Source of the DNA: Hypanus sabinus
Taxonomy: Eukaryota
Reading direction: 5' to 3'
NCBI RefSeq assembly: GCF_030144855.1
Contig: NC_082710.1
Span: 174,654,001 to 174,718,000 of the forward strand
DNA length: 64,000 nucleotides
Positions 9,890 through 61,533 of the stretch are shown here, one piece after another. Below the pieces are notes generated by a model. The model worked only from the letters and a program-made list of their open reading frames with translations, did no database searches and was not told where the DNA came from. Numbering within the stretch: position 1 is the stretch's first letter; every line of letters begins with the position of its first letter. The translations under genes and the position numbers were made by a program.

Positions 9890-9958
9890 ATTGGAAATGA
9901 ACCGGGATCCTTGGAGCCGTGAGGCAGCAGTTCTATCTGCTGCACCACGAGGCTGCCC
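9890..9958 (-). mobile_element. tRNA-derived SINE head about 30 bp inside the VARS1 intron
   Basis: Minus strand GGGCAGCCTCGTGGTGCAGCAGATAGAACTGCTGCCTCACGGCTCCAAGGATCCCGGTTC with A- and B-box-like motifs. Confidence 0.6.
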
Positions 9959-9986
9959 TCTGGGGGCTCAGTTTGAAGGATAGTAC

Positions 9987-26260: not shown

Positions 26261-26581
26261 TCTTGCTACAGAAGTCTGATTTATTTTGTGGGGACACATT
26301 CGTCTAATTGTTGTAATGTTCAGATTCTTTAAATGTATTGTAATGGTACCCAGCAGGTGTAAAATGATTCATTGGGATGAGTTACAAGGTGGCCAACTTT
26401 TTTTAAATTTAATCTGGTACAGGGATCGAAAAACGGATAAATTACGTTTAACTGGAGGGAAGTGGGGTAGGATAGAGCTTTTCGATGGGCGGTAGTCAGT
26501 GATGTCTCAATAATATATAGTGAATTTTGGGCAAGATTCATATTCTTTTTCAATAGCTCCTCCCAATGGAGATGTGTGAGC

Positions 26582-26597
26582 GGCTCTGAAAAGAGCC
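26582..26597 (-). terminator. Histone 3' stem-loop (H1-like A)
   Basis: Canonical GGCTCTTTTCAGAGCC followed by purine-rich GGAGGAGCT (HDE-like). Confidence 0.92.
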
Positions 26598-26620
26598 TTT
26601 TGTGTTCATTTACTCGGGTT

Positions 26621-27175
26621 TTATTTCTTTCTGGCTCCTCGTCGTTGTCGCCCAGTTGCAGTGGAGGCTGGCCTAGACACCTTCTTTGCCTTGGCTTTCT
26701 TGGTAGGTTTTTGGGCACGAGGCTTGCCTGCTGCCGTTCTCTTCGGGCTAGGTTTCCTGGAGGGCGCCTTTCTCGTAGCGCCTCTTTTACTCCTACCCTT
26801 CGTTTCGCCCTGCTCGTCTTCTGCCCCTTGAATTTCCGACACGCCCTCCGGGCGAAGAGGAGCCGTGGAGATACCAGCGCCACCCTCGACTGGAGCGGCG
26901 TTATCAACCAAGGCGCCGGCCTTACCTACTTCATGGTCAGTGGCAGAGACGGTTTTTTTCACCGTAACAGACTTCGGGGCCTGGCGTTTCTTAGTGGCAG
27001 ACAGCGCCTCCATAGTTTTCTCGACCACGGCAGCCGCCGTGCTTTTTTGTGGCTTGTAATCGGTCTTTTTGACGGCAAAGAGTGCGGCGGAAGGGACAGA
27101 GAAGGAGCGATCTCCGGCGAGATCAAGAACGACAGGAGCCGGGACATCCGCCTTGGCGGATACAATCTCGGCCAC
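26621..27175 (-). CDS. Highly divergent H1-like protein A (eroded globular domain); start uncertain (GTG 27175, or ATG 27214)
   Basis: Intronless ORF with basic C-terminal tail, TATA at 27232-27239 and canonical stem-loop; VVEKTMEALSATKKRQ...VKKTVSA aligns with H1 helices 1-2. Confidence 0.7.
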   Translation of the reverse strand: MAEIVSAKADVPAPVVLDLAGDRSFSVPSAALFAVKKTDYKPQKSTAAAVVEKTMEALSATKKRQAPKSVTVKKTVSATDHEVGKAGALVDNAAPVEGGAGISTAPLRPEGVSEIQGAEDEQGETKGRSKRGATRKAPSRKPSPKRTAAGKPRAQKPTKKAKAKKVSRPASTATGRQRRGARKK

Positions 27176-27902
27176 TATACGCCCATGCAATGGACTCCTC
27201 CTACAAAATGGCATGCAGAAGCGAAGTATGGTATATAAACGCAAAATGCGGACTTGGTAGACTCAATGAGCTCAGCTGCGCCTATCACGTCGGAGGAGTT
27301 GACCAATCCACTGCTCTAAACTGCAGTTTAGCCGCGCCCCTCGATCTGTTGCTTTCCTTTCCCCATCCCATCACCTTACTATTCGATTCACCGTTCACCA
27401 AAATTCAGACAAATTAATTTTTTATTTGGACCAAGCTCTTGCACCATGCTACTCACTTTCATTTCGTCCTGTTCAGGTATCAAATAATAAGAAATGTTTA
27501 GCCTTGCAAGCTTTAAGTCACGTTACCACCAACTGAAGTGCAGCCACAGAGCATTGTAAAAGTCTACAGTCATTCCCACACCTTGTCCCATCTCGTTGTT
27601 ATTTTGTTCTCAATATTTAACATGATAAAGAATACGTTGAGAAGAAACTACTCAAAGCCTTACAAAACGAGTTTAGTATTAGTGTATTTAAACTTAAAAC
27701 GGCGGTAGGGTACTTGGACACCGAGAGGAGAGAAGGTCTAGAAGTCTGTCCGTGAAAATTGAAGAAGCAAGATGTGAGATTTAGTAGTACAGTGAGTTTG
27801 GACCAATCGTACATTTGAAACTGAAAAGGATTTCACACAGGAAACTCCTATATCCTCCAGTGTTTTCTACTTTAAATTCAATAAATGACCCTTGCACTTC
27901 TC

Positions 27903-28002
27903 CTACGATGTGGAGAACAAAGCCCATCTCAGCAAGGTGAGCAATGGGTCCCTTGTGCGGATCAGACGTGGCAAAAACTCCACAGACTCGTTCACCCTCA
28001 GC
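27903..28002 (+). pseudogene. Inverted H1 globular-domain fragment
   Basis: YDVENKAHLSKV-SNGSLVRIRRGKNSTDSFTLS, paralogous to 28715-28825 on the opposite strand. Confidence 0.75.
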
Positions 28003-28029
28003 GCTTCTCCCCGTAACGGTTGATGTCGT

Positions 28030-28450
28030 CTCCAATCAAAAACCTATCAACCTCTGCCTTAAATACACCCAACGACCTGGCTTTCCACAGCTGCATGTGA
28101 TAACAAATTATATAAGTTTATCACCCTGTTGCTCGCATCTGTTTCAAATGGACGCCCCTCTATCCTGAGGGTGTGCTCTCCTATCCTGGACTCCCTCACC
28201 ATGGGAGACATCATTTCCACATCTACTCTATCTAGACCTTTCAATAATCGAAGCCAGCACTTCCTTTCTTAGATGAGGAGCCCAAAACTGTTCACAATAC
28301 TCAAGGTGATGACTCACCATTGCCTTAAAGGTCTCAGCATCACACCCCTGGTCCTGTATTCTGGACCTCTTGAAATGATTACTAACATCGCATTTGCCTT
28401 CCTCACTACCGATTCTACCTGCAAGTTAAAGTGTACGGTATTTTGCACAA
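28030..28450 (-). mobile_element. CR1 3' fragment
   Basis: KGLDRVDVEMMSPMVRESRI..H.LRIEG motif. Confidence 0.75.
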
Positions 28451-28605
28451 GGATATTTCTCCTCGTTCAGAAACAGCCTGCATTCATTTCAACTATATGT
28501 GGTTATTATAATGCACTGTGCAAATATAGCTCTGAAAAGTCGTCAATTTTTGACCTTTTATTTCCCTTTAATATAATTTGTCTTTTTTATGCTTTCAGCA
28601 TTTCG

Positions 28606-30222
28606 CTACTTTTTGTGTTTTTGTTGACATTGTTTTCGCTTCTTAGCCTTGCTGACTCTGTTAAGGTTGGTTTTGGTCGCAGCTTCCTTTTGCTCTCGGC
28701 TCTGCCTTTTGCTGAAAGTGAAGAAGTCCGTGGAGTTTTTGCCACGTTTGGTCCGCACAAGGGATCTGTTGCTCACCAATCTTTTGACCACCTTGTTGAG
28801 ATGGGCTTTGTTCTCTACATCATAGCCATTGTGAAGCAATAACTCTCTGAGCGAGGCGAGCTACAGGCCGCCACGTTGTTTACGAGCGGAGGGCGCCCGT
28901 ATGAAAAGTTGTGAGATGCGCAGAACCTCCATCTTCCGTCGCCTGCTGGGTTTCCTCCTCGTTGCTGTCGGCTTCTGCTGTTCTTTTTGCTGTCGTTGCT
29001 AGGCGTTAACGCCAGGTGGAGTTTTGGACACTTGGGCATTAGCTCCAACAACTGGTGCTGCCAACCACTGCTAATTGTTTTTTTCCCAAAAATACTTTAT
29101 TCAGAAATATTACAAAATAAAGTTATTTACAATAAATTATACGTTGACTCTCTGTTCCTATTCAAATTAAAGATGTTTACAATAAAACATTCATTGACTC
29201 TCAAACTTCAGACAAGTTTATTGCATTTCCAGCCACTCCTGGGGCACCATGTTGAATCATCCATCCACACCGCTGATGAGGGGTATTTTCCTCCCCACCC
29301 GGCCCCTCCCACTCCCGCGGGTGATGAACCTTAAACTGTGGTCCTTCCCCACCGGGCCTCTGCGGTGGCTGCACCGAGTTTGAGTGTGTCCCTCAGCACG
29401 GACTCCTGCAGCCGAGAATATGCCAGTCGGCAGCATTCCCCCACGGACATCTCCGTGTGCTGGTAGACCATCAAGTTTCGGGCCGACCAAAGAGCGTCTT
29501 TCACCGAGTTGATGATCTGCCAGCAGCACCGGATGTTGGTCTCTGTGTGCGTCCCCGGGAACAGCCCGTAGATCAGAGAGTCCTCTGTTACGCAGCTTCT
29601 GGGGATGAACCTCGACACAGCCCCTTCCATCCTCCTCCACACCTTCTCCGCGAACCCACAGTGTGCGAAGAGGTGGGTCACCGACTCCTCCTCTCTGCAG
29701 TCCTCCCATGGCCAGAGGGGTGTGGAGACGACGTTCCGGGCGTACAGGAGGGATCGGACTGGGAGGGCCCCTCTCACCACCAGCCAGGCGAGGTCTTGGT
29801 GCCTGTTGGTGAGGTCTGGCGATGAGGCAATTTGCCAGATGAACTGGACAGTCTGCTCAGGGAACCACCCCACTGTGTCCATCTCGTCCTTCTCCTGCAG
29901 TGCCTGCAGGACATTACGTGCCAACCACTGTCTGATGGCCCTGCGGTCAAAAGCATTGACCTGGAAGAACTTCTCTACGAAGGACCGGTATGGCGGCATC
30001 GACCAGCTGACAGGGGTGTTGCGCGGGAAAGGGGCCAGACCCATCCTTCGTAGCCAGGGCGACAGGTGGAACCTGGGCACGCAGTGGTACTTGGTGTCCA
30101 CGTACCTGGGATCCACACACAACCTGATGCAGCCACACACGAAGCTTAATTGTTAAGCTTAACTGCTTAATTGTTTTAATTTTTTTTGCTTGTTTTAATA
30201 CAAAAACACCCTCGGCTCTCAT
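28606..30222 (-). pseudogene. H1-like pseudogene B, interrupted by a Tx1/L1 insertion
   Basis: ATG at 30222 behind TTAAAT and CCAAT elements; after removing the insertion the frame reads MRAEG...ISQLFIRAPSARKQRGGL*LASLRELLLHNGYDVENKAHLNKVVKRLVSNRSLVRTK; in-frame stops; decayed stem-loop at about 28528-28544. Confidence 0.8.
29080..30146 (-). mobile_element. Tx1/L1-clade non-LTR element, 5'-truncated, open frame
   Basis: 269-aa ORF with zf-RVT (RGALPVR...CREEESVTHLFAHC); AATAAA and A-tail; TSD-like ACTGCT(T)AATTGTT at 29067 and 30162. Confidence 0.88.
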
Positions 30223-30581
30223 GCGTTCACCGTCAAAGTGAAAACGACAGCATTTAATGGCGGGACGAGGACTCAATAGAAACAATCTCGGAACCCCCAC
30301 CCCCGAGCGCACCAATCCCATGTATCCTCTGCTTGGCTCCGCGTTTTAGTGCGAATTCAAAGGTTCAAAGCACATTTAATATAAAAATGTATAAATTATA
30401 ATAAACTCGTGTACTTAGCATGCGCCGGCCATTTGCAAATCAATCATTCAATAGCACGTTTTCATTAAAATTTTTATTGGAAAGTTAACTTTTATTTGAT
30501 GCCAACAGTACTTGCACGGAATCGCTTTATCCCAAATCCACAAATAAACCAAATGATTTTGCTCTTGATTAAGTATTTCGT

Positions 30582-30597
30582 GGCTCTGAAAAGAGCC
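30582..30597 (-). terminator. Histone 3' stem-loop (H1-like C)
   Basis: Canonical GGCTCTTTTCAGAGCC 24 nt after the stop. Confidence 0.93.
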
Positions 30598-30620
30598 GTT
30601 GTCTCTGTCGATGCCTTTAT

Positions 30621-31250
30621 TCAGGTGTTCTGGTGCTGCTCTGAGTCAACTTTCTCGGAGGATGATGTCTCTGTCAGAGGCTTCTCCGCTTTTGCCGGTC
30701 GTTTGGTTGGTTTCCTTGGTTTCGGACGTTGGCGACTTGTCTTCTTAACTTTCCTGACTGCTTTTCTCCTCGAAACAGTTTTCGGTTTTCTGCCGTCTTT
30801 CGCCCACTTCTTACGGCCGCCAAACTTCTTCATCCCCCGATACGTCTTTTTGGGTTTCTTAGCGGGGATGGGTCTCTTGGCCGCACGTTTTCCCATCGAT
30901 GTTTTGACGGCGGAGGTTCGTGAAGCGACCCCTTTCTTCTCTGCCCGCTCCACCTGGTCCTTCTGCTCCTTGCTGAGTTTGAAGGAGCCTGAGGCTCCCT
31001 TACCAGTGACGTTTACTAACGAGCCCTTGTTCACCATGGTCCTCACCGCCTGGATTATCCGAGAGTTGTTTTTCGTTACGTCGTAGCCGCTGCCCGATAG
31101 CACCTTCTTGACACCGGCGAGCGAGAGACCGCGGCGCTCCTTTGTATCCGCCACCGCATGAATGATCATCTTGGATACGGATTCATTCTTCGGCACCTGC
31201 GGAGCTTTGGTCTTCTTCCGAGTACGTTTAGTACGTACAAGGTCAGTCAT
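30621..31250 (-). CDS. Histone H1 variant C (209 aa)
   Basis: Complete winged-helix domain SVSKMIIHAVADTKERRGLSLAGVKKVLSGSGYDVTKNNSRI...KGSLVNVTGKGASGSFKL; TATA-like TTAAATA at 31306-31312; stem-loop. Confidence 0.93.
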   Translation of the reverse strand: MTDLVRTKRTRKKTKAPQVPKNESVSKMIIHAVADTKERRGLSLAGVKKVLSGSGYDVTKNNSRIIQAVRTMVNKGSLVNVTGKGASGSFKLSKEQKDQVERAEKKGVASRTSAVKTSMGKRAAKRPIPAKKPKKTYRGMKKFGGRKKWAKDGRKPKTVSRRKAVRKVKKTSRQRPKPRKPTKRPAKAEKPLTETSSSEKVDSEQHQNT

Positions 31251-31536
31251 ATCTCCGCACGATTCACTCTCTCTTCAGAAGTGAAGTGTTTCCAGCAGCT
31301 GCCGCTATTTAAGAGCGGGTGCCGGACGGTGCAGAGCCAAGTTAGCGCCAACGTCTCGATCCACACACGGAGGAACTCAGCAGAGCAGACACATTCCTGT
31401 GGGGGAAATGAATAGACGACATTTATGGTGGAGAGCTTTCGTTTGAACTCGTCTATGGTATTCTTCATCTGGGCTCGATCCTTCAAAGATCTCGATCTCA
31501 GGTTTTCGTCTCCTTAAATGTATATTCTGTGTGGGG

Positions 31537-31569
<33 letters not shown>

Positions 31570-31570
31570 A
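31537..31570. repeat. Compound (GT)n(AT)n microsatellite
   Basis: Direct inspection. Confidence 0.9.
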
Positions 31571-32565
31571 ACAGCTTGTGTATCACGCTGGAGTAAGAAA
31601 TTATTTTACAGACAGCAAGTGTGCGAGAAAATATATGTTGTAAATCCTAAAACAAAATATTAAATTTGAAACCATTCACAGAGGCAACGCAACTGTCACA
31701 AAATCTGTATTTCGAGATTGTAGGATTAAGTTTCACAATGGGAAGATATCAAACTAAAACAACGTTTGGAGAGCTTGATTGAAACCCACAGCAAGGAGAA
31801 TCTAGCTTTTTAAAAAATAACTATTAATTAGCCATTCAGTGTTAGTCAGTGAAAATTCGGAAGCGAGCAGATTCAGCGTGCAAAATCTCAAACATTGAAA
31901 TGAGGTTTTTACCATTACCCCTGTACTTTCGTTCACAAAATATTTTATAGATATCGACTGTGAAGACATTGGGAAATATTGAGAAACGAGGATGTTCCAA
32001 ATTAGAATGAAATAGCCCGCTTCTCCCCAGCCTTCATCGGTTCGTATAAGGTTTACTTGTGTAGTGTAATTGTTTTAATCTAATAATTAAACAAGTTCAA
32101 GTCGTCCAACCCGCTTTGTAGCAAATTAATTACTTTGCAACACCTGGAAAGGTAGTGACTGGTAGATTAATGTGATTCTACTGTCAAAGAAATTACGCTG
32201 CCTCTTTCGAAATCTAACTAGTTGGGTTTACTAGTTAATATTTACAAACGAAAAAGCGCGTTTTGAATATTGTTGAGCATCACCAAAATTAGATCACCTG
32301 AAATGTAACCTAAGAAACAACGAATCGCTGCTTTGGAAATGGAGCGTTTGACGCAATGAGATGTATTGTTTATCATTGACTCAAGATGCCGGAGAAAATT
32401 GCCACGCCGGCCCGAACAGCTCCTGCAGGCAAAAATTTGGGGGCGTTGGTTTAATCGCACTACCCAGCTGTTGGTTTGCACCTTTCAAAGGCTTCACCGG
32501 GAATTTTAACAGCAGTAATGGTTGGGTCTCCTCACTGAGATTCAAACTTTCACTGTCATTACATG

Positions 32566-33259
32566 TGTAAAGGGGGTTTCTTTTTTCCCTTTGTTACTGT
32601 TGGGAAAGGGTTTCCTTTTGTTAACTAGCAGGAATGCTAATTTACTGATAACGAGAATGGTATTCCTTTGTAAACCAAATGGGGATTAATGTTCTATCTT
32701 CTGAGTCTAAGCTTTTGTTGACGGGCTTTTGGGCAGATCGGCGCGAGGGGGTCGAGAGAGAGGACGCAATGCTCTAAGCTGGGCGAGGATCGGACCCCAA
32801 AGGGGGGGTCCGAGGCCGGGAGATTCTCCGAGGGGGGGGGGATGAAGCTAGATGTGCTTGGTTGACCACTCGGAGGGTCCTGAGCTGTTTGGAGAGTCGA
32901 GGAGTTCGGAGGGTCCTGAGCTGCGAGTCGAGGAGTTCGGAGGGGATCGAATGGTGGCCAGAAGTCTTCAGAAATTGAGCTCCAACGGCTGTGCACGAAG
33001 TGGTTTGGACTTTGATAAGTTTGGCGCCTTTTCTTTAATTTTCTCTTCATATATACTGTATTGTTATTAATCACTTAGTTATAGTAACCTTTATAAATTG
33101 TACTCATTTAATCGCATATGGTGTACTGTCTGTTTTTGGGCGAGGCGGGGACATCACACAGCATCCACACCAGCTGATTACCCAGTTTGGCGGGGCTGAA
33201 GGCTGCTCCCCCTAGACAAGAACGAGCTGAGCGAGCCTGAGGCGACCCAGGGGGTTACA
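32566..33259. mobile_element. Solo LTR (694 bp)
   Basis: TGTAA...TTACA termini with perfect 4-bp TSD CATG; CpG-rich; internal tandem duplication at about 32870-32945. Confidence 0.85.
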
Positions 33260-33586
33260 CATGGTTTCTAAATACATTATTTTCTCTCAGTTACTGACAT
33301 CACCCCTCTTTACTCGGTACTAATCTCCCTGCAAAGGGATTTTTTCCACTCTACGATGTAGACCAGTTTCGCACCTCGAATCTGCCCGTCTCTGACATGT
33401 AGTTTATTTAACTCCATATTTCATGCAGGAGGAACTCAGCAGCAACTATAAAGGGCAATGACAGTCGACCTTTCATGGGGAGACCCTTCAGGACTGGAAA
33501 GGATTGCATACCTCCTTGTTTTAACGTGGTTTATCTAATCCAGTGAATTATTGTAGTGGCATTCAGCTCAATTTTTGTCGTTTAGT

Positions 33587-33602
33587 GGCTCTGAAAAGAG
33601 CC
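33587..33602 (-). terminator. Histone 3' stem-loop (H1-like D)
   Basis: Canonical GGCTCTTTTCAGAGCC, followed by an HDE-like TTGAGCTG. Confidence 0.93.
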
Positions 33603-33631
33603 GTTGTGTTCAAGGCTAGGTTCCAACTGAT

Positions 33632-34273
33632 TCACTTCAGCCGAGAGGCTACTTTCTGTTTGTAGGGTTTACGAGGCCGCCCAACTGGCCGCCGCCCCAG
33701 TTTCCCTTTGCCCGCCCCCTTCCTGCCACGGGCCACCTTGCGCGCGTAGGACACCCTAACTTTGGGGGATTTTGGCTTCATGCGCCGACCGCGGCCCTGC
33801 AGCCCACTCTTCCCCTTGGCCGTCCGTTTTTCCTTCGCAGTTCGGCCGCTCTTGTTCGGCAACGAGTTCTCGTTAAGCATCGAAGTGATCTTAGCCGCTT
33901 TCTTCAGCGCAGAGGCACGAGCCGGCTGAAGGCTCTGGCCTTTGTTGGAGCGATTGAATCGAAATGATCCGGAGGCGCCGGTGCCGCTGGTCTTCACGAG
34001 CGAGCCCTTCTTCACCAGACGCCGCACTGTCTGGTTGACGAGGTTGTTGTGGCGGTTTACATCGTAGCCTTTGCCTGACAGCGCTTTCTTGAGGGCGGCC
34101 AGCGAGATGCCGCGTCGCTGCTTGCTGGCCGCCGCGACCGACAGAATGCGTTCAGTCACCGTGGGGCCCTCCCCCTTCTTGCGAAAATATCGCTTCTTCC
34201 TGAGGGCCATCGCCTTCGTCTCCCCACCTCCAAAGGGGTCACCGATAGCTTTGACCTTGTGGCTCTCAGCCAT
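33632..34273 (-). CDS. Histone H1 variant D (213 aa, Arg/Gly-rich tail)
   Basis: GPTVTERILSVAAASKQRRGISLAALKKALSGKGYDV...KGSLVKTSGTGASGSFRFN; TATAAA at about 34351-34356; stem-loop. Confidence 0.93.
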   Translation of the reverse strand: MAESHKVKAIGDPFGGGETKAMALRKKRYFRKKGEGPTVTERILSVAAASKQRRGISLAALKKALSGKGYDVNRHNNLVNQTVRRLVKKGSLVKTSGTGASGSFRFNRSNKGQSLQPARASALKKAAKITSMLNENSLPNKSGRTAKEKRTAKGKSGLQGRGRRMKPKSPKVRVSYARKVARGRKGAGKGKLGRRPVGRPRKPYKQKVASRLK

Positions 34274-34719
34274 GGCAGGCAGGTTAGGTGTCGCTCTCTT
34301 TCTCGCTTGCCGTTGTTGGATAAGGCACAGGCATCAAGCCCAGGCTCGCCTTTATATCAACGAGGCGGACGCGAAGGAGAAGACCTAAAATCCCTCGCTC
34401 TCCTCGCACCTTCGCCAAACCTCCCGTTGCCAATTTTGTGTCTTTTGCTTTTATTAAATCCTTGGGTCCCCGGAAACCCGCCTACCACGCCAAACCAAAC
34501 CCGCTGTGTCTCTTGCTAACGGATGCAAAGCATTCGATTTCCCAGGCGTTGCGAGTCTGTGCCTCATTTAACTCGCCAAAACCTCCAGCTAGTTGTAAAA
34601 GTAATTGGACCACGTTGGCATTTTGCTCCTTCTTCCTGAGAAACTACGTGCAATTCTTCGAGCTCTGTCGGAATTTAAACATTCCCTCCAAAGCCAAGTT
34701 GGGACGCGCTCAGACCAAC

Positions 34720-37529
34720 AGTTTAAGATGTGTCTATTTTAAAGCAAGGAGTGTTGTGAACAAAGTGGATGAGTTTAGAGCGTGGATCAGTACTTGGAGA
34801 TATGACGTGGTGGCCATTACAGAGACTTGGATGGCTCAGGGACAGGAATGATTACTTCAAGGGCCGGGTTTTTAGATGTATCAGGAAGGACAGGGAGGGA
34901 GGCAAAAGGGGCGTGGCACTGTTGATCAGAGATAGTGTCAAGGCTGCGAAAAGCTGAATGCCATGGAGGGATTGTCTATGGAGTCTCTATAGGTGGAGGT
35001 TAGGAACAGGAAGGGGTCAATAACTTTACTGGGTGTTTTATAGGCTGCCCAATAATACCGGGGTTATTGAGGAACAGATAGAGAAACAGATCCTGGAAAG
35101 GTGTTATAATAACAGAGTTGTCGTGGTGGGAAATGTTAATTCCCCAAATATTGATTCCCTAGAGCAAGTGTTTTAGATGGGGTGGAGTTTGTTAGGTGTG
35201 TTCAGGAAGGTTTCTTGACACAATATGTAGATAATCCTACAAGAGGAGAGGCTGTACTTGATTTGGTATTGGGAAATGAACCTGGTCAGGTGTCAGATCT
35301 CTCACTGGGAGAGCATTTTGGAGATAGTGATCATAATTCTATCTCCTTTACAATAGCATAGATAGGAACAGACAAATTAGAAAAGCGTTTAATTGGAGTA
35401 AGGGGAATTATGAGGCTATCAGGCAGGAACTTGGAAGCTTAAGTTGGGAACAGATGTTCTCAGGGAAAGGTATGAAAGAAATGTGGCAAATGTTAGGGAT
35501 ATTTGTGTGGAGTTCTGCATAGGTACGTTCCAATGAGACGGGCAAGTTATGGTAGGGTACAGGAACCGTGGTGTACAAAGGCTATAGTAAATCTAGTCAA
35601 GAAGAAAAGCTTATGAAAGGTTCAGAGAGCTAGGTAATGTTAGAGATCTAGAAGATTATAAGGCTAACAGGAAGGAGCTTAAGAAGGAAATTAGGAGAGC
35701 CAGAGGGGGCCATGAGAAGGACTTGGCAGGCAGGATTTAGGAAAATCCCAAGGCATTCTACAAGTATGTGAAGAGCAAGAGGATAAGACATGAAAGAATA
35801 GGACCTATCAAGTGTGACAGTGGGAAAGTGTGTATGGGACCAAAGGAAATGGCAGAGGTACTTAATGAATACTTTACTTCAGTATTCACTATGGAAAAGG
35901 ATCTTGGTGATTGTAGTGATGACTTGCAGCAGACTGAAAAGCTGGAGCTTGTAGATATTAAGAAACAGGATGTGCTGGAGCTGTTGGAAAGCACCAAGTT
36001 TGATAAGTCATCGTGACCAGATGAAATGTACCCCAGGCTACTGTGGGAGGTGAAGGGGGAGATTGCTGAGCCTCTGGCAATGATCCTTGCATCATCAATG
36101 GGGATGGGAGAGGTTCTGGAGGATTGGAGGGTTGCAGATGTTGTTCCCTTATTCAAGAAAGAGAGTAGAGATAGCCCAGGAAATTATAGACCAGTGAGTC
36201 TTACTTCAGTTGTTGGTAAGTTGATGGAGAAGATCCTGAGAGGCAGGATTTATGAACATTTGGTGAGGCATAATATGATTAGGAATAGTCAGCATGGCTT
36301 TGTTAGTAGCAGGTTGTGCCTTATGAGCCTAATTGAATTTTTTGAGGATGTGACTAAACACATTGATGAAGGAAGAGCAGTAGATGTAGTGTATATGGAT
36401 TTCAACAAGGCATTTGATAGGTACCCCATGCAAGGCTTATTGAGAAAGTAAGGAGGCATGGGATCCAAGGGGACATTGCTTTGTGGATCCAGAACTGGTT
36501 TGCCCACAGAAGGCATAGAGTGGTTGTAGAGGGGTCATATTCTGCATGAAGGTCGGTGACCAGTGGTGTGCCTCAGAAATATGTTCTGGGACCCTTATTC
36601 ATGATTTTTATAAATGACCTGAATGAGGAAGTGAAGGGATGGGTTAGTAAGTTTGCTGATGACACAAAGGCTGTAAGTGTTGTGGATAGTGTGAAGGGCT
36701 GTCAGAGGTTACAGCAAAATTGATAGGATGCAAAACTGGGCTGAGAAGTGACAGATGGAGTTCAGCCCAGGTAAGTGTGAAGTGGTTCATTTTGGTAGGT
36801 CAAATATGATGGCAGAATATAGTATTAATAGTAAGACTCTTGGCAGTGTGGAGGATCAAAGGGATCTTGTGGTCCGAGTCCATAGGACACTCAAAGCAGC
36901 TGCACAGGTTAACTCTGTGGTTAAGAAGGCATACGGTGTTTAGGAGCTGAGAGGTAATGTTGCAGCTATATAGGACTCTAGTCAGACCCCACTTAGAGTA
37001 CTGTGCTCAGTTCTGGTCACCTCACTACAGGAAGGATGTGGAAGCCATTGAAAGGGTGCAGAGGAGATTTACAAGGATGTTGCCTGGATTGGGGAGCATG
37101 CCTTTTAAGAATAGGTTGAGTGAACTTGGTCTTTTCTCCTTGGAGCAACGGAGGATGAGAGGTGACCTGATAGAGGTGCACAAGATGATGAGAGGTATTG
37201 ATCGTGTGGACAGTCAGAGGCTTTTTCCCAGGGCTGAAATGACTGTCACAAGAGGACACAAGTTTAAGGTGCTGGGGAGTAGGTACAGAGGAGATGTCAG
37301 GGGTAAGTTTTTAACTCAGAGATTGGTGAGTGCATGGAATGGACTGCCAGTGACAGTGGTGGATGCGGATATGATAGGGTCTTTTACGAGAGTTTGGATA
37401 GGTACATGGAGTTTAGAAAAATGACTATGGCTATGGGTAAGCCTAGTAACTTCTAAGGTAAGGACATGTTTGGCATAACTTTGTGGGCCGAAGAGCATGT
37501 ATTGTGCTGTAGGTTTTCTACGTTTCTAT
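34720..37529 (+). mobile_element. CR1 LINE ORF2, nearly complete, degenerate
   Basis: LRCVYFKARS, ITETW, NYRPVSLTS, FADD and LEYCAQFWSP motifs; TTTCTA-type tail. Confidence 0.92.
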
Positions 37530-38155
37530 GAATCACTGAGTGAGTGTTTTCAGGGTTCTGTACCTCCTTCCTGATGGTAGCAATAAGAAGAGGGCATGTC
37601 CTGGGTGGTGAGGTCCCTAATGATGGATGCTTGCCTTTTGGAGGATCTATGTAAATGTGCTTAACAATGGGGAGGGATTTCACTGTGATGCACTGGGCTG
37701 TATCTACTATTTTCTGTAGTCTTTTCAGTTCCTGAGCATACTGTCCTCTGGGCATTTACAGAAGTTTGTCAAAGTTCTGTTCATCATTCTGTTATCACAA
37801 CACCTTGGAATCATTCCATCAGGACAGGTGAAATCTAGGTGTTACAGAACCTCACATGTTAAAAGCAAAATAGCCAATTAGACCTCAACTACAGTTTTCT
37901 GACATTTGTTGGAAGTGATGCAGGGTTAAAATCATTCAATTTACTTCAAGAATGTCAATATCAAGACTAATTTGCAAGTTTGAAATACAGTACCAAATGT
38001 CAGTTTGTTATATAAAGGAAACCGTGATTTCATGGACAGAGGCACAGGAGATTCTGCTGAAGCTGGAAATTAAACAATACACACAAAATGCAGGTGAAAC
38101 CCAACAGATCAGCAAGATCCACACAGAATGCTGGAGAAAATGGGTGGACCAGTCA

Positions 38156-38357
38156 NNNNNNNNNNNNNNNNNNNNNNNNNNNNNNNNNNNNNNNNNNNNN
38201 NNNNNNNNNNNNNNNNNNNNNNNNNNNNNNNNNNNNNNNNNNNNNNNNNNNNNNNNNNNNNNNNNNNNNNNNNNNNNNNNNNNNNNNNNNNNNNNNNNNN
38301 NNNNNNNNNNNNNNNNNNNNNNNNNNNNNNNNNNNNNNNNNNNNNNNNNNNNNNNNN
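38156..38357. other. Assembly gap (202 N)
   Basis: Run of N; falls within a Penelope-like terminal repeat. Confidence 0.99.
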
Positions 38358-56179: not shown

Positions 56180-56470
56180 CATGTCGGCCAACGGCCGACA
56201 GCAAAACCGTTTGTGATATAACCGCAACCCTCATTTGCATAAAAGGATTGAAAATGTACCCTCGGCGTGTAGCCAATCAGAAGTCAGACTTTTAACCAAT
56301 GGGCTTAAAGCATACCGCTGACGATCCCCTGCAATACTCACAGCGACGCACCGCAAATCGGAGAAAACAGAAGGTGGTTTGCATTAAGACATCATTGGAA
56401 GATTGTCTCGGTTTAATAAAATATAGAAATAACAAAAAAATCAATAATTCATTGGCACGTATTAGTCTAT
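56180..56470. promoter_or_regulatory. Orphan histone-like promoter
   Basis: ATTTGCAT at 56233-56240, CCAAT at 56273 and 56296, two ATTGG, CpG-rich; no histone ORF on either side. Confidence 0.45.
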
Positions 56471-58964
56471 TATTTGGCGTCCTTCCGCGCCTTGTCTTTT
56501 TATTTTTTTGAGGCTACGATGCGACTAATTCAATAACAAGGCTTCATTCCAGGATTTTTTTTAATAAGACGGGAAACCAGAAACCCGATTTCAGCACCTT
56601 CAGTCCGACTGACTTTAGAATGTTGCTTGGGCACAATTGGCTTTTTATCTGAGATCTCAAATTTATCTCTGCAATGTTGAAAATACCATAGTTTAGCCTA
56701 GAAATGCTTATTAACCGGAATTTAGATTTGATCTTAATCAAATCTAAAAAACAATAAACACATAAATTAAATCTGTCAAAACCTATAGGTTTTAAACAAC
56801 TTTTATTCCATTCTTGACTCAGGAAATATTCTCCAGAAACTAGCCAAACGAACTTTTAACTGTGGGCAACGTGCACAAAGTGCTGGCAGAACTCAGCAGG
56901 TAAGGCAGCAACTATGAACATATGGAACTCCAAGCAGTCAAGACCCTTCACCGTAGTCCACTTTAAAATTATAGTGGTTTTTGTAATACAAACTGCAAAA
57001 TTACAAGGCAATATGTGTAGCCATTCTGAGAATCATGGCCTTTCACAGTTTTGTCTAATCAGCGCATTAATGAAACTCTTCAGATGCACTTAAGTTGAAT
57101 TAAGAGTCCATCAAATCCGACAATGACAGGATACCAGTGCGGGGGAGTTTTTAATCAGAATCAGAATCAGATTTATTATCACCGGCATGCGACGTGAAAT
57201 TTGTGAGCTTAGCAGCAGCAGTTCAATACAATACAAAATCCAGCAGAGAGAGAAAATAATAATAATTAATTAATTATATATATTGAATAGGTTTTTTTTA
57301 AATGTACAAAACCAGAAATCCTGTGTATTTTAAAAAGTGAGGTAGTGTCCAAAGCTTCAATGTCCATTTAGGAATCAGATGGCAGAGGTGAAGAAGCTGT
57401 TCCTGAATCACTGAGTGTGTGCCTCCAGGCTTCTGAATCTACTATCTGATGGTAACAATGAGAAGAGGGCATGCCCTGGGTGCTGGGGGTCCTTAATAAT
57501 GGACGCTGCCTTTCTGAGACCTTTGAAGTTTGAGTCCTGTGGTACCAAGAAATGTCACAAACTTGGTTGCTGTCGAAGACCACGATGTCTTCTGTGCCTT
57601 GTCATGCTCTTCGTTCTCCACGAAACGATACAGTAAAGCTTACCCGGCCATCAGATCGCACTGTAGATCTTTTCCACCCAGTTCGCCGGAGCTGGCTTTG
57701 CATGCTGGCTGGGTTAGCAATGCCACTTTTTCACCAGGTATGAGGCTGCCAGCTATCCTCCCCGGGTTTAGCTCACCTGTCGAAGCGATGTACCGGGGGT
57801 GAGAGCTGAGTGTCCACTGGTGACCAAAAATGAGTGAGCTGTCCCGGAATGGACACAGCAGGTCCCCTTCACCAGAGGAATGGACAACCCATATACCACA
57901 ACATAAACAGTGCATGCATTCAGGTTTGATCTTATTTCCAATCTGAGGAATCTGATCACAAAACAGTTAATTCGAGTGTATTTTCATTCAATTCATTTAT
58001 TGAAGGATTCTAATGACTTCGGAGTTTGCAACTTCATAACTTTTTAAACACTAACTTTCACCAATGCTGAACTTAACATTAATTCCAAATCCAACTATTA
58101 TATTTCCCCATCTTCTAACCTTCATAGCCTGGCCTCACACATTAACCTCAACATCTAACCTTTGACCTTAACTCAATTCCTAATCGCATGATGTCAACAG
58201 CGCAGTACAGGAGCAATGGTGGTTAGATTTCCATTCTGTGTTTTACTCGTGATTTATTTCACAAATGTATTTGTAATATCGATCTTCCTAAATTTAAAGG
58301 TGGAGTTGCGCGTTAACTATTATATCCTCACTGAAGAGGAGCCCATTCAATCTTCCGTTTAATTATTTATTTTTAAAGTATGTGTTGACAGCATTGAGTA
58401 CAGTCTTTCCAGCAGATAAAGACTATTTTCTCGTTTTCAATGTAATTGGTCTGTTGAGGTTCAAAGTATTTGATAAAAGTACACGAGAATCAAAAATGAG
58501 AACCAATTTTTTCTTTTGAAATTTTTCGACATTTTGGTGAAACCAGTGGGGATAGTGCAGCGAACTGTGAAAAATAAAGTTCTAGATCATGTTTTAAGTC
58601 CAGGAAATTTACAGTAATCTGCCAAGGCAATAATTGATTTGCCCAGTTACTTTCATTTTAAATGATCCTCTCAGCCTGTTAAGCGAATTTAAAAGCAATC
58701 GTAAAAGTAAAAACTACCGTGATGTAATTTTTAAGCAGGGAAGAATATGTTGTTGGACGGAAAATGGACGGGGATAAATAAAAATCAGAACCACAAAGTG
58801 TTAAATTTCATCCCTAAAACTCTAAGGTTCGTTATTTTCCTATTGAGAGTCATTTAAAAACGTTAAGTGGATGTCGTTCAAAGTGAGTCGGAATAAATAA
58901 CGAAGTTATGTGTTTTACTTGCGCATATTTCGAGCTTAAACAAATCGTAGCTGGAACACATCTC

Positions 58965-59335
58965 AGCACACACAAAATGCTAGAGGAACTCAGCAGGCAA
59001 GGCAGCATCTATGGAATGAAAAGGCAACACGAGCGAATCTGCAGATGCTCGAAATAAATAAAAAACACAAAATGCTGGCAGAACTCAGCAGGCCAGACAG
59101 CATCTATGGGAGGAGGTAATAACGATGTTTCGGGCCCAAATCCTTCATCAGGATTGCTCACTCCTGTCTGGCCTGCTGAGTTCTGCCAGCATTTTGAGCT
59201 TTTTATCCATGAAATAAAGCACAGTCGATGACTTCTGCATATTTTCCTGACGAAGGGTCTTGGCGCGAAACGTCGACAGTGCTTCTCCTATAGATGCTGC
59301 CTGGCCTGCTGTGTTCTACAAGCATTTTGTGTGTG
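58965..59335. mobile_element. Cluster of Penelope-like terminal repeats with hammerhead cores
   Basis: Several CACAAAATGCTGG..GAACTCAGCAGGCCAG units in both orientations; CTGACGA...GAAACGTC at 59247-59274. Confidence 0.7.
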
Positions 59336-59723
59336 CGGTGTGATGTGCTGTGTTTTTTTTTGCAGAATTCAGTAATTTTATTTGTATGACTGTAAGAGGC
59401 AAAGATGCTACCGTAAAGTTGTTGAATTACCTGCTCACCTGCGTCTGGCTTGTCGCGAGGGAATTAGATATATTTCTGACCTTATATATGAGAAAACGTG
59501 GTTTCTTGAAAGATTTATTTTTCGAAAATGTTTTTAGGGGTTCAGTTATCTCCACCGAACACGCCAAATGCAAAACAGTCATTGCAATGCTTGTGTCTGC
59601 TTTAAAGTTTAGACAAAGGTGCTTGGTAGTTGAAATAAGGTTAGATTGCCATTCGTAGAAAGGGACTTTTTTTCCAAGAGCAGAGCTCGAGTTAACATGC
59701 GCACCTTGTAAATTGTAAATTAT

Positions 59724-59810
59724 GCAGCCCGGTGGTATAGTGGTATCAGCACTGGACTTTGAGGCGTATGTATTTGGAATCAGGCCACTCCTTGCCTGCT
59801 TTCCATCGAG
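59724..59810 (+). mobile_element. tRNA-derived SINE head or tRNA pseudogene
   Basis: A-box TGGTATAGTGG and anticodon-arm-like CTGGACTTTGAG; T-arm and B-box decayed. Confidence 0.45.
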
Positions 59811-60772
59811 TATTTGCCAATCGGAAGGTCGTGATCCATCTTTGTTTCTAGTGTCCCTACTGTCGCCGAAAAGGCTGTATTGATAACGTGCTTCAGAGTT
59901 CTTACTGATAACAGGTATTTTCAACATGTCCATCTGGGGATGAAGGTGGTTATTTTGCCGAAGACTTGAGGAACATTGGAATGAAAGGCTGCGATTTGTG
60001 TTTATAACGTCCACACTACAGGTGCTATTGGACCTAAATGAATCTTAAACTATCAGGTTAATTTAGGACTTTTCGGTTAAAAGGGTAGTTGCCATGCCCG
60101 AGCTAAGATGTAGAACTCTCCGATCGCGAGGTAAGCCCTAGTCCAAAGCCGTTGTGATCTCTTATAGCGTCCATGAGTAAAATATTGATTGGGGGATGAT
60201 GGTCTTATCATGAAAACTGCAAAATATCTTTGGTTGCAGCAGGTTCCTCCGATTTACTCAGCTTTCACGTCGCAAAGTTGTTGTGTTACTGAGGCTATGC
60301 TTAGCAGGATATTTCCCGGTTGCATACGATATTAAAACAATAGGGCCCTGTGGAATATGAGTCTCAACTCTTCGTCTGCAAGTTTAAGGCTTAACAGGAG
60401 ACGAAATATCGAACAGGTGCGACGTTCTAACCCGGAAAATGGGAGAAGCCTGTTCCTTTGAGGTGTCACGGCGCAATGATGGAGTGTTAGGAAAGACGCC
60501 AGAGCGTTTCTAAACTCCAAATCATCGCTTAGGCAAGAAATTGTGCAGGGTGGGAAGTAGACGACAGGCGCGGCTTTCCGAGTGCTCGATTTTGAGCTGA
60601 ACGCGAGCCACTTTCGGAGAGGAGAAAGCACAACCGCGCTGCCTCGGGCGGTACCGGGAGGCCGGTTGTCTACCGCGTCCGCGCCGCCGCTTTAACCGCC
60701 GCCCTGCCAGGCCGGTGCCGTCACTGAGGCCGCAACTGCAGGGCGGAAGCAACGCGGGTGAGCGGCTACTGA

Positions 60773-61456
60773 ATGGCAGATTCGGAAGTGGTGGGCACCG
60801 GCGTCTCTGCTGCGACGGCCCCGGCACCGCCATCACCGTCTCCTTTGGACGAGGCAGAGGTGCTGGACATTGCGGCGGCCGTGAAAAAGAAGCGGAGGCA
60901 GTACCGGCACAAGAAGTTCGGCTGTACGGTGGCCGAGCATATCATGAAGGCGGTGGCATCCACCAAGGAGCGCCGCCGGCTCTCAGTGGCTGCTATGAAG
61001 AAGATGCTGTCGCCCAGCGGCTATAACCTGGCCCGCAGTAACTCGCGGGTCAATCGAACTGTGCGCAGCCGGCCTAGCAAAGGATCGCTGGAGCAAACGG
61101 CGGGCTCTGAAGCCTCGGGCTCGGCCAAGCTTAGCAACAGTCTGGAGGAAACGACGGCAGAAACTCCCAAGATGGTGCTAACCAAGAAGTCGATGGCTAG
61201 GAAGTCCCGAAGGCTGAAGGCGACAAGCAGGAAGAGGTGCCAGCGGATGAAGAGACTGGACAGGCACCGTAAGAAGTACGGCGCCGTGAAAAGGTCGACC
61301 CGCTGGAAAGCCGTCCGGGTGAAGAAGGTGCTGGCGATCCGCCGGGTCTCGAGAAAGCCGAAGGAGGCTGCGAAGAGCCCATCGCAGAGTGTGAACCCGA
61401 CAGGTTTGGATGTGAAACCGACTCCATCCAAACACAATGACTCAGACATGAGCTGA
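60773..61456 (+). CDS. Histone H1 variant F (227 aa, Arg-rich, predicted polyadenylated)
   Basis: TVAEHIMKAVASTKERRRLSVAAMKKMLSPSGYNLARSNSRV...KGSLEQTAGSEASGSAKL; intronless, CpG-island promoter. Confidence 0.88.
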   Translation: MADSEVVGTGVSAATAPAPPSPSPLDEAEVLDIAAAVKKKRRQYRHKKFGCTVAEHIMKAVASTKERRRLSVAAMKKMLSPSGYNLARSNSRVNRTVRSRPSKGSLEQTAGSEASGSAKLSNSLEETTAETPKMVLTKKSMARKSRRLKATSRKRCQRMKRLDRHRKKYGAVKRSTRWKAVRVKKVLAIRRVSRKPKEAAKSPSQSVNPTGLDVKPTPSKHNDSDMS

Positions 61457-61516
61457 AACAGTATACATTATGTTAATCTGACGTAACAGACATATGTGCT
61501 AATGATTTTTTGATCA

Positions 61517-61533
61517 AATAAAGAGAAAATAAA
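61517..61533 (+). terminator. Tandem poly(A) signals of H1 variant F
   Basis: AATAAA at 61517 and 61528, followed by a GT-rich element; no histone stem-loop seen after the stop. Confidence 0.7.

What the first reader, a model, noticed from the sequence alone, without database searches (positions are those of the whole stretch)
26582..61533. Cluster of highly divergent Arg-enriched H1 variants: candidate germline H1-to-protamine-like series
Seen: five open H1-like genes (A 27175-, C 31250-, D 34273-, E 42527+, F 60773+), one pseudogene and one fragment, but only one H3, one H2A and no H4 or intact H2B. None has the Lys/Ala/Pro tail with repeated S/TPKK of somatic H1. Hand counts give D about 26 Arg/34 Lys, F about 26/29, C about 21 Arg and E 17 Arg, most of it in the last 35 residues. 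The globular domain ranges from intact (C, D) through altered (F) to half lost (A, E). Established: protamine-like sperm proteins derive from H1 by Lys-to-Arg shifts and loss of the winged helix, and chondrichthyans use spermatid-specific basic proteins. Inference: this is a spermatogenesis-specific variant array showing several stages of that transition side by side.
Basis: partly seen in the sequence, partly recalled or inferred. Interest (0 to 1): 0.85.

Follow-up and report, generated by a model that had tools for sequence, protein, structure and literature searches.

The report
Ancient Arg-rich H1 variant cluster, cartilaginous fish
This stingray window holds members of four old, separately conserved, arginine-enriched linker-histone (H1) families found in sharks, rays and (two of them) a chimaera; they are real specialised genes, but they are parallel lineages rather than a stepwise H1-to-protamine series, and where they are expressed is unknown.

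Summary
A has lost its ancestral ATG (now GTG). B is a pseudogene. No separate H1 "fragment" was found, but a decayed H4 piece lies at 59430-59625. The assembly gap is intergenic and touches no gene.

The genes are not a graded local series. A tree gives four clades (C, D, E/A, F), each with 100/99 support and each holding both sharks and rays. D-like and F-like genes also sit in one elephant-shark histone cluster.

- C and D keep a full globular domain and a histone 3' stem-loop.
- Most D-family members (12 to 14 of 17, by strictness), plus the chimaera D-like gene, carry an AT-hook-like tail motif.
- E/A has a degenerate helix 3 and wing in every species aligned.
- F is polyadenylated, with a 3'UTR conserved in skate.
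- All five promoters share a GTCCG motif just upstream of the TATA-like box.

Arg enrichment is family-wide: R/(R+K) is 0.32-0.73, against 0.05-0.28 in bony-vertebrate H1. Total basic content (21-30%) is not raised, so none is protamine-like in charge.

Germline use is plausible (about 0.4) but untested. I found no paper on these families. An earlier scan note flags a similar all-variant cluster about 830 kb upstream on the same chromosome.

The parts
26621..27175 (-). H1-derived gene A. It is the batoid-type member of the E/A family. The ancestral start codon is now GTG, and the gene is probably decaying.
   Evidence: ORF. GTG start. No Pfam hit. Groups with the Pristis, Leucoraja and Rhinoraja orthologues on a long branch (0.65).
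26557..26602 (-). Sub-threshold histone 3' stem-loop of A. The stem is perfect but the 3' flank has diverged.
   Evidence: Rfam RF00032 at 21.8 bits against a gathering score of 34. Alignment.
27232..27253 (-). Promoter core of A: GTCCGC motif followed by TATATA.
28609..28998 (-). H1 pseudogene B, with an in-frame stop inside the globular domain. It cannot be assigned to any of the four families.
30621..31250 (-). H1 variant C (209 aa). Intact globular domain, basic tail, and an acidic/polar C-terminal end.
   Evidence: Pfam 62.3 bits. Orthologues at 97% (Hemitrygon), 84% (Mobula) and 45-47% (sharks). Clade support 99/97.
30556..30602 (-). Canonical histone 3' stem-loop of C.
   Evidence: RF00032 at 36.5 bits. 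The skate C-family gene also has one, at 37.2 bits.
31306..31327 (-). Promoter core of C: GTCCGG motif followed by TTAAATA.
33632..34273 (-). H1 variant D (213 aa). Intact globular domain and an Arg-rich tail with a C-terminal PVGRPRK motif (AT-hook-like).
   Evidence: Pfam 58.3 bits. Family hits. Motif survey. Chimaera homologue.
33561..33607 (-). Canonical histone 3' stem-loop of D.
   Evidence: RF00032 at 34.5 bits. The chimaera D-like gene also has a stem-loop.
34351..34370 (-). Promoter core of D: GTCCGC motif followed by TATAAA.
38156..38357 (.). Assembly gap. It is intergenic and no gene reads across it.
42457..42478 (+). Promoter core of E: GTCCGC motif followed by TATAAA.
42527..43069 (+). 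H1-derived gene E (180 aa), a fast-evolving member of the E/A family. Helices 1-2 are kept, helix 3 and the wing are degenerate, and the last 35 residues are Arg-rich.
   Evidence: Pfam 19.9 bits, below the cut-off. Mobula orthologue at 84%. AlphaFold2 predicts only helix 54-64. Alignment.
43094..43139 (+). Weak stem-loop of E. A six-pair stem is kept with one G-U pair; the loop and the 3' flank have diverged.
   Evidence: RF00032 at 17.2 bits. Alignment.
48541..48951 (-). Histone H3 with substitutions in the histone fold. Its stem-loop is at 48470-48514.
50404..50793 (-). Histone H2A ending in [11 protein letters not shown]. Its stem-loop is at 50329-50374.
   Evidence: It is 91-92% identical to the H2A of the elephant-shark cluster, which has the same kind of ending.
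59430..59625 (+). Frameshifted H4 pseudogene remnant.
   Evidence: tblastn with elephant-shark H4 gives two pieces in different frames, E = 1e-10.
60677..60695 (+). Promoter core of F: GTCCGC motif followed by TTTAA, in a GC-box-rich promoter with no TATA box.
   Evidence: The core is conserved in skate and chimaera.
60773..61456 (+). H1 variant F (227 aa). It has a conserved Pro-rich/basic N-terminal extension. The end of helix 3 and the wing are altered in the Hypanus/Mobula lineage.
   Evidence: Pfam 37.5 bits. Orthologues. All 12 family members hit Pfam. Alignments.
61517..61533 (+). Two AATAAA poly(A) signals of F (61517-61522 and 61528-61533). There is no stem-loop.
   Evidence: The 3'UTR has about 82% mean column identity with skate.

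Best explanation
The window is part of a conserved cartilaginous-fish cluster of variant histone genes. The genome is most likely Hypanus sabinus.

The cluster holds members of four old H1-derived families. All four descend from the cluster-type (H1.1-H1.5-like) linker histone. All four shifted from Lys towards Arg and lost the S/TPKK tail repeats.

- C family: full winged helix, stem-loop mRNA end, basic tail capped by an acidic end.
- D family: full winged helix, stem-loop end, Arg-rich tail. Most members carry a conserved C-terminal (R/K)P(V/I)GRP(R/K)K motif that looks like an AT-hook. I infer that it adds minor-groove contact with AT-rich linker DNA.
- E/A family: only helices 1-2 of the winged helix are conserved, followed by an acidic patch and a basic tail. 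I infer that it no longer docks on the nucleosome dyad and acts as a largely disordered basic chromatin protein.
- F family: replication-independent and polyadenylated, with a GC-box promoter.

All five promoters share a GTCCG(C/G) element 6-16 nt upstream of the TATA-like box. I infer a common regulator, and hence co-expression in one special setting.

Shown here: gene structures, family membership, age, conservation, 3' end types and the promoter motif. Inferred: the biochemical roles and the setting. My estimate for the setting is male germline about 0.4, oocyte or early embryo about 0.15, and ordinary somatic subtypes about 0.25. Gene A is probably a decaying copy.
For: - Identity of the genome. 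The contig length, 187,191,526 bp, is shared with a Hypanus sabinus protein record, and C is 97% identical to its Hemitrygon orthologue.
- Four clades. Each has 100/99 or 99/97 support, each holds sharks and rays, and all are separate from a bony-vertebrate H1 clade.
- Age. The elephant-shark locus L007 holds an F-like gene (no stem-loop, AATAAA) and a D-like gene (RPVGRPRK motif and a stem-loop) beside H2A, H2B, H3 and H4.
- Synteny. Family members share one chromosome in Heptranchias, Heterodontus, Rhinoraja, Pristis, Carcharodon and Chiloscyllium (contig lengths). The order E, H3, H2A is kept in Mobula.
- Constraint. Crude omega is 0.29-0.51 over deep comparisons. The F 3'UTR has about 82% column identity between stingray and skate, against about 55% identity at synonymous sites.
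- 3' ends.
- Winged-helix state: Pfam scores, alignment, AlphaFold2 models.
- Parent type. All four are closest to GH1/H1.1-H1.4, with much weaker hits to H1.0, H5 or H1x, or none.
- AT-hook-like motif. It is present in 12 to 14 of 17 D-family members, depending on how strictly it is defined, and in the chimaera D-like gene.
- Promoter motif. It is at the expected place in all five genes, which accounts for 5 of 8 window hits against 4 expected by shuffling. It is conserved in the skate and chimaera orthologues.
- Composition.
Against: - There are no expression data of any kind, so 'special setting' rests on analogy and on the shared promoter motif.
- I could not find a canonical Lys-rich somatic H1 from any elasmobranch in my searches. 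One of these families, most likely C, could therefore be the ordinary somatic H1. The Arg shift would then be a lineage-wide trait.
- Pfam's AT_hook model does not hit the D-family tails.
- The AlphaFold2 models are low-confidence (pLDDT 52-53) from 12-row alignments, and no control model of C or D was possible.
- The omega values come from saturated, whole-length pairwise estimates.
- The GTCCG motif has no known binding factor.
Confidence: 0.6

Rival explanations
1. This is a spermatogenesis-specific array in which the paralogues display successive stages of the H1-to-protamine-like transition (Lys to Arg, then loss of the winged helix).
For: - Arg enrichment and loss of S/TPKK.
- Erosion of the winged helix in E/A and in F.
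- The nearest protein-language-model clusters are 'spermatid-specific linker histone H1', 'testis-specific H1 histone' and 'protamine-like protein'.
- Mammalian spermatid HILS1 likewise lacks S/TPXK motifs and condenses DNA poorly (PMC6069787).
- PL precursors often lack the C-terminal hairpin of the winged helix (PMC11607694).
Against: - The genes are four parallel clades, each holding sharks and rays, and each state is stable within its clade.
- Basic content is 21-30%, no higher than somatic H1, and E and A have only about half the net charge.
- The parent type is H1.1-H1.4-like, not the H1.0/H5-like type proposed for PL proteins (PMC11607694).
- C and D keep S-phase-type stem-loops.
- From my own knowledge: elasmobranch sperm is packed by true protamines, after small spermatid proteins that are unrelated to H1.
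- No expression evidence.
Confidence: 0.15
2. These are the ordinary replication-dependent somatic H1 subtypes of cartilaginous fishes. On this view Arg-richness is a lineage-wide feature of chondrichthyan H1 and not a sign of germline use.
For: - C and D have canonical stem-loops.
- The C family lies nearest to bony-vertebrate somatic H1 in the tree and has several copies in skates.
- No Lys-rich elasmobranch H1 appeared among the hits of three searches, although many tetrapod and teleost ones did.
- Every chondrichthyan H1 seen, including Callorhinchus P0105, has R/(R+K) of at least 0.32.
Against: - Each gene is single-copy here, in a cluster with only one H3 and one H2A.
- Earlier scan notes, unchecked, report repeated histone units with their own H1 on other pieces of this genome (s1-207110, s1-207169).
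- F is polyadenylated and E/A lacks a working winged helix. Neither fits a main somatic H1.
- The promoters lack the H1 box (AAACACA) and carry their own shared motif.
Confidence: 0.25
3. These are maternal or early-embryo linker histones, analogous to H1oo/B4 or to sea-urchin cleavage-stage H1. They would be stored in oocytes and used before the somatic set takes over.
For: - F has a poly(A) mRNA end and a GC-box promoter.
- Net charge is lowered and acidic stretches are present in F, C and E/A.
- The cluster also holds divergent H2A and H3 genes.
Against: - None of the PDB sequence searches returned an H1.8/H1oo entry.
- From my own knowledge: Arg enrichment is not a feature of the oocyte H1s.
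- No expression data.
Confidence: 0.15
4. The genes are decaying pseudogenes of a dead histone cluster.
For: - B is broken.
- A has lost its ATG and sits on a long branch.
- An H4 remnant is present.
- Transposon remnants fill the spacers.
Against: - C, D, E and F have intact ORFs and full-length orthologues across sharks and rays. Family-specific motifs, promoters and 3' signals are conserved, and omega is below 1.
Confidence: 0.03

Closest known systems
Cluster-type vertebrate linker histones (H1.1-H1.5 and testis H1t/H1.6)
   Same: - The globular-domain sequence is closest to these (GH1/H1.1-H1.4 at 46-80 bits).
- The genes have no intron.
- They lie in a histone cluster.
- C and D have stem-loop 3' ends, and A and E have weak ones.
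   Different: - R/(R+K) is 0.34-0.47 here, against 0.05-0.10 in tetrapod H1.
- There is no S/TPKK, and no Lys/Ala/Pro tail.
- There is no H1 box in the promoters.
- The four families form their own clades apart from bony-vertebrate H1.
Mammalian spermatid linker histones HILS1 (H1.9) and H1T2/H1fnt (H1.7)
   Same: - A divergent globular domain, no S/TPXK motifs, Arg-rich tails and lower helicity (PMC6069787).
- They are the nearest protein-language-model clusters to D, E and F.
- F, like them, is polyadenylated.
   Different: - Orthology could not be tested, because no reference sequences were available to the tools.
- From my knowledge and PMC6069787: the mammalian genes lie outside histone clusters. 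[quoted passage not shown]
- Expression of the shark and ray genes is unknown.
Protamine-like (PL-I) sperm proteins of molluscs, tunicates and some fishes
   Same: H1-derived, with Arg gained at the expense of Lys and with the wing lost in some members (PMC11607694).
   Different: - PL proteins are proposed to derive from the replication-independent H1.0/H5 type (PMC11607694). These families are closest to H1.1-H1.4.
- Basic content here is only 21-30%.
- Presence in sperm is unknown.
Plant GH1-HMGA proteins (H1 globular domain plus AT-hooks)
   Same: The D family combines a GH1 domain with a C-terminal GRP-core motif flanked by basic residues. A plant cluster carrying Linker_histone plus AT_hook appears among the distant neighbours.
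   Different: There is a single motif with Val in place of the first Arg. There is no Pfam AT_hook hit. The origin is clearly independent, inside vertebrate H1.

Membership tests
Linker histone H1/H5 (Pfam PF00538) | Winged-helix globular domain scoring above the Pfam gathering cut-off (22.4 bits) | tested here: met
   Met for C (62.3), D (58.3) and F (37.5), and for all 12 F-family members.
Linker histone H1/H5 (Pfam PF00538), applied to genes E and A | Winged-helix globular domain scoring above the Pfam gathering cut-off | tested here: not met
   E scores 19.9 bits and A has no hit. Only 1 of 12 E/A-family members matches at all. Descent from H1 is still clear: the family profile hits H1.2 at E = 4e-11 and GH1 at 4e-9.
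Replication-dependent histone gene | 3' stem-loop (Rfam RF00032) in place of a poly(A) signal | tested here: met
   C scores 36.5 bits and D 34.5 bits. A (21.8) and E (17.2) are sub-threshold, so inconclusive. The skate A/E orthologue has a canonical-looking stem-loop by eye; Rfam at gathering threshold did not report it.
Replication-dependent histone gene, applied to gene F | 3' stem-loop | tested here: not met
   There is no RF00032 match within 700 nt, even at E = 10. Two AATAAA signals lie 61-77 nt after the stop, and they are conserved in skate.
Protamine-like (PL) sperm nuclear basic protein | Very high basic content, clearly above somatic H1 | tested here: not met
   K+R is 21-30% and net charge +23 to +52. 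The bony-vertebrate H1s measured here have 28-33% and +51 to +58.
Protamine-like (PL) sperm nuclear basic protein | Presence in spermatid or sperm chromatin | not testable with these tools
   No expression or proteomic data could be reached. The Logan contigs carrying the skate orthologues run past the 3' processing sites, so they are genomic and not transcripts.
AT-hook (Pfam PF02178) | GRP core flanked by Arg/Lys and Pro | tested here: inconclusive
   The motif (R/K)P(V/I)GRP(R/K)K lies near the C-terminus in most D-family members (12 to 14 of 17, by strictness) and in the chimaera gene. hmmscan gives no AT_hook hit, and DNA binding is untested.
H1.0/H5 and H1x (H1.10) variant lineages | Globular domain closest to that lineage | tested here: not met
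   H1.0/H5 hits score 22-38 bits and H1x 23 bits, against 46-80 bits for GH1/H1.1-H1.4.
HILS1 / H1fnt (mammalian spermatid H1) | Orthology by tree or synteny, and spermatid expression | not tested
   The only evidence is feature similarity from a protein language model (0.89-0.94). No reference sequences were available for a tree.

The most novel reading that the evidence does not exclude
Cartilaginous fishes keep a dedicated, co-regulated, all-variant histone module. It consists of four H1-derived families plus divergent H2A, H2B and H3, and has been kept since before the chimaera-shark split. On this reading it is used in spermiogenesis between canonical histones and protamines. The E/A family would then be a vertebrate example of a linker histone frozen halfway to a disordered basic protein. 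The D family would be the first animal H1 with a working AT-hook. The shared GTCCG promoter element would be the switch for the module.
Probability: 0.3. Interest if true: 0.8.

Novelty: new variant of a known kind. Interest (0 to 1): 0.6.

Why it matters
Vertebrate H1 variants have been defined almost wholly from mammals, birds, frogs and teleosts. Here there are four further families. Each is found in both sharks and rays, and two reach back to the split from chimaeras. They have distinct architectures: an AT-hook-like tail, an eroded winged helix, a poly(A) variant inside a stem-loop cluster, and an acidic tail cap. They also share a promoter element.

They give a natural test set for two questions: what the winged helix, the Lys/Arg ratio and the S/TPKK repeats each contribute, and how germline or stage-specific linker histones arise. 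Elasmobranch testis is zoned by stage (my own knowledge), so their timing relative to the histone-to-protamine exchange could be read directly. If instead they prove to be the ordinary somatic H1s, the textbook picture of Lys-rich H1 would not hold for a whole vertebrate class.

Tried and rejected
1. DNA of the close orthologues (Hemitrygon, Mobula birostris, Mobula hypostoma) for a proper dN/dS. Only deep, partly saturated comparisons with skate and chimaera were possible.
2. Transcript evidence from Logan contigs. The two skate runs (SRR17051962 and SRR17051963) give contigs that extend past the stem-loop or poly(A) sites, so they are genomic. Neither run number appears in any held paper.
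3. Literature. No held paper describes H1 variants of sharks, rays or chimaeras.
4. Finding a canonical Lys-rich elasmobranch H1. None was among the listed hits. Two Lys-rich Logan proteins (P0019, P0020) come from runs of unknown species. This stays open.
5. Pfam AT_hook on the D-family tails: no hit.
6. Fold searches were not run, because both AlphaFold2 models had pLDDT near 52-53.
7. B could not be assigned to a family.
9. Rejected: H1.0/H5, H1x or H1.8 ancestry, and pseudogene status for C, D, E and F.

Full report
**What is in the window**

- C 30621-31250(-)
- D 33632-34273(-)
- E 42527-43069(+)
- F 60773-61456(+)
- A 26621-27175(-)
- H3 48541-48951(-)
- H2A 50404-50793(-)

The hand counts of Arg and Lys are exact. 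None of C, D, E or F has an S/TPKK motif.

A tblastn search and a family HMM run over all six frames find one more H1 relic, B (about 28609-28998, minus strand). B has an in-frame stop inside the globular domain. No other significant H1 fragment appears. Using elephant-shark core histones as queries, I found a frameshifted H4 remnant at 59430-59625 and no H2B.

The gap at 38156-38357 lies in AT-rich non-coding DNA between transposon remnants, about 4 kb from the nearest gene. No reading frame depends on it. I did not try to fill it.

**Gene A is probably not functional**

At the position where E and the skate orthologue start with ATG, A has GTG. The only upstream in-frame ATG lies about 20 nt after the TATA box, so it is probably outside the mRNA. 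A also sits on a long branch (0.65), fails Pfam, and has a stem-loop with a diverged 3' flank.

**mRNA ends**

- Rfam finds threshold-level histone stem-loops after C, D, H3 and H2A.
- It finds sub-threshold ones directly after A (21.8 bits) and E (17.2 bits).
- F has none. It has two AATAAA signals 61-77 nt after the stop.

These end types are conserved.
- The skate C-family gene has a stem-loop.
- The skate A/E orthologue has a canonical-looking stem-loop by eye, although Rfam at gathering threshold did not report it.
- The chimaera D-like gene has one.
- The skate F orthologue has a 3'UTR with about 82% column identity to the stingray one, including the AATAAA signals. Synonymous sites of the same gene pair are only about 55% identical.
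- The chimaera F-like gene also has AATAAA and no stem-loop.

**Where the genes come from**

The window's contig length (187,191,526 bp) equals that of a Hypanus sabinus protein record, and C is 97% identical to a Hemitrygon akajei protein. The genome is therefore most likely the Atlantic stingray.

Each gene has full-length relatives across sharks and rays.

| Gene | Relatives and amino-acid identity |
|---|---|
| C | Mobula 84%, skates 58-61%, sharks 45-47% |
| D | Rhinoraja 49%, Heptranchias 41% (95% coverage), many others |
| F | Mobula 78%, Pristis 59%, Heptranchias 50% |
| E | Mobula 84%, Heptranchias 51%, Heterodontus 47%, and others |

A maximum-likelihood tree of 62 proteins gives four clades. 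F, D and E/A have 100/99 support and C has 99/97. Each holds both sharks and rays. All are separate from a clade of teleost and tetrapod H1.

Within E/A, gene A groups with the Pristis and skate genes. E plus its Mobula orthologue form a fast-evolving branch.

An elephant-shark contig (L007) carries, within 20 kb:
- two H3 genes and an H2A;
- an F-like H1 (P0186);
- a D-like H1 of 212 aa with the tail motif RPVGRPRK;
- an H4;
- a third Arg-rich H1 (P0105);
- two H2B genes.

So at least the D and F families, and the clustering itself, predate the chimaera-shark split.

Contig lengths show that family members share one chromosome in Heptranchias, Heterodontus, Rhinoraja, Pristis, Carcharodon and Chiloscyllium. 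Mobula keeps the local order E, H3, H2A.

**Family features**

Arg enrichment is a family trait, not a local one.

| Group | Mean R/(R+K) |
|---|---|
| D family | 0.54 |
| F family | 0.58 |
| E/A family | 0.42 |
| C family | 0.40 |
| The 11 bony-vertebrate H1s in the tree | 0.13 |

The window's own copies sit at the low end of their families.

- The D family carries (R/K)P(V/I)GRP(R/K)K 10-20 residues from the C-terminus in most members (12 to 14 of 17, by strictness) and in the chimaera gene. This is AT-hook-like, although Pfam's AT_hook model does not score it.
- The C family ends in a conserved acidic/polar stretch.
- The E/A family keeps a conserved N-terminal block and helices 1-2. In every member aligned, helix 3 and the wing are replaced by a Pro/Ser/Ala-rich stretch, followed by an acidic patch and a basic tail with a conserved end. 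Only 1 of 12 members hits Pfam, and AlphaFold2 predicts only helix 1 (low confidence). A family profile still finds H1.2 at E = 4e-11.
- The F family has a strongly conserved basic block before helix 1, and an ancestrally intact domain (all 12 members hit Pfam). Only Hypanus and Mobula carry the Leu/Val-to-Arg/Pro/Glu changes at the end of helix 3 and in the wing. Chiloscyllium carries a separate set of changes. AlphaFold2 still predicts three helices but no hairpin (low confidence).

All four families are closest to GH1 and H1.1-H1.4. Hits to H1.0, H5 or H1x are much weaker or absent, and no H1.8 entry was returned.

**Constraint**

Pairwise Nei-Gojobori estimates against the skate and chimaera genes give omega of 0.29-0.51. 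These are whole-length, partly saturated values, so they are upper-leaning. They show purifying selection on fast-evolving proteins.

**A shared promoter element**

All five H1-type promoters have GTCCG(C/G) 6-16 nt upstream of the TATA-like box. These are 5 of the 8 window matches to the pattern, against about 4 expected in shuffles, and each lies in the expected place. The motif and its surroundings are conserved in the skate A/E, C and F orthologues and in the chimaera D-like and F-like genes.

The H3 and H2A promoters have CCAAT plus TATA instead. None of the H1 promoters has the H1 box AAACACA. F has GC boxes and no TATA box. I infer a common regulator.

The descriptive core is right and the genes are real.

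The 'series' is not supported.
- The states belong to old parallel lineages.
- The erosion in E/A is shared by all shark and ray members aligned, and is stable.
- Total basic content (21-30%) and net charge (+23 to +52) are not raised above somatic H1, which measures 28-33% and +51 to +58 here.
- PL proteins are proposed to stem from the H1.0/H5 type (PMC11607694). These families do not.

The germline idea stays open.
- The nearest protein-language-model clusters to D, E and F are labelled spermatid-specific H1, testis-specific H1 and protamine-like. That may simply reflect Arg-rich, divergent H1 composition.
- Mammalian HILS1 offers a functional analogy: no S/TPXK, low helicity, poor condensation (PMC6069787).
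- Against a simple germline reading, I could not find a canonical Lys-rich elasmobranch H1 in any search.
- Unchecked earlier notes do report H1 genes in repeated histone units elsewhere in this genome (s1-207110, s1-207169).
- They also report a second all-variant cluster with further Arg-rich and broken-domain H1 genes 830-865 kb upstream on the same chromosome (s1-195638, s1-195650, s1-195656, s1-195658).

**Verdict**

This is a conserved chondrichthyan cluster of four uncharacterised H1-derived families, annotated in databases only as 'histone H1-like'. I found no paper on them. I rate it a new variant of a known kind, of moderate to high interest. The function is inferred only. The decisive test is tissue- and stage-resolved expression.

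Noticed in passing
window 27232-27253(-), 31306-31327(-), 34351-34370(-), 42457-42478(+), 60677-60695(+); also L001 near 9950, L002 near 9900, L007 near 9900 and 11990: All five H1-type promoters share a GTCCG(C/G) element 6-16 nt upstream of the TATA-like box. It is conserved in the skate and chimaera orthologues and absent from the H3 and H2A promoters. No known binding factor comes to mind.
   Followed up: partly
window 59430-59625(+): A frameshifted, degenerate H4 pseudogene about 1.1 kb upstream of F.
   Followed up: yes
window 50404-50793(-) and L007:5957-6343(-): The H2A of this cluster ends in [11 protein letters not shown]. The H2A of the elephant-shark cluster ends in KKTGQPSKVYA and is 91-92% identical overall. 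I could not tell whether this is a conserved variant or the ordinary chondrichthyan H2A.
   Followed up: partly
window 48541-48951(-) and L007:3627-5211(-): The H3 here has several conservative changes in the histone fold relative to the two elephant-shark cluster H3s (95-96% identity). All three share His in the KD(I/V)HLARR stretch, where I recall Gln in canonical H3.
   Followed up: partly
L007:18572-19024(+) and L007:17415-17795(+): The elephant-shark cluster holds two divergent H2B genes. One has a long Gly/Ser/Ala and Arg-rich N-terminal extension. This fits an all-variant cluster.
   Followed up: no
window 2970-3311(-) and 9933-10349(-): ORF pieces that look like exons of a GST-like N-terminal domain, of the kind seen in eEF1-gamma or valyl-tRNA synthetase. 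This suggests a spliced gene upstream of the histone cluster.
   Followed up: no
window 61697-61934 (both strands): A stretch of about 235 nt downstream of F matches a miRNA-precursor model weakly, and equally on both strands. This suggests a long hairpin or an inverted-repeat element.
   Followed up: no
window 137-2772, 17825-22155, 29331-30140, 36026-37424: Remnants of reverse-transcriptase and endonuclease ORFs (LINE-like and retrotransposon-like) fill the spacers between the genes.
   Followed up: no
window about 31550-31590(-), upstream of C: A (TA)n(CA)n microsatellite about 300 nt upstream of the C start codon.
   Followed up: no
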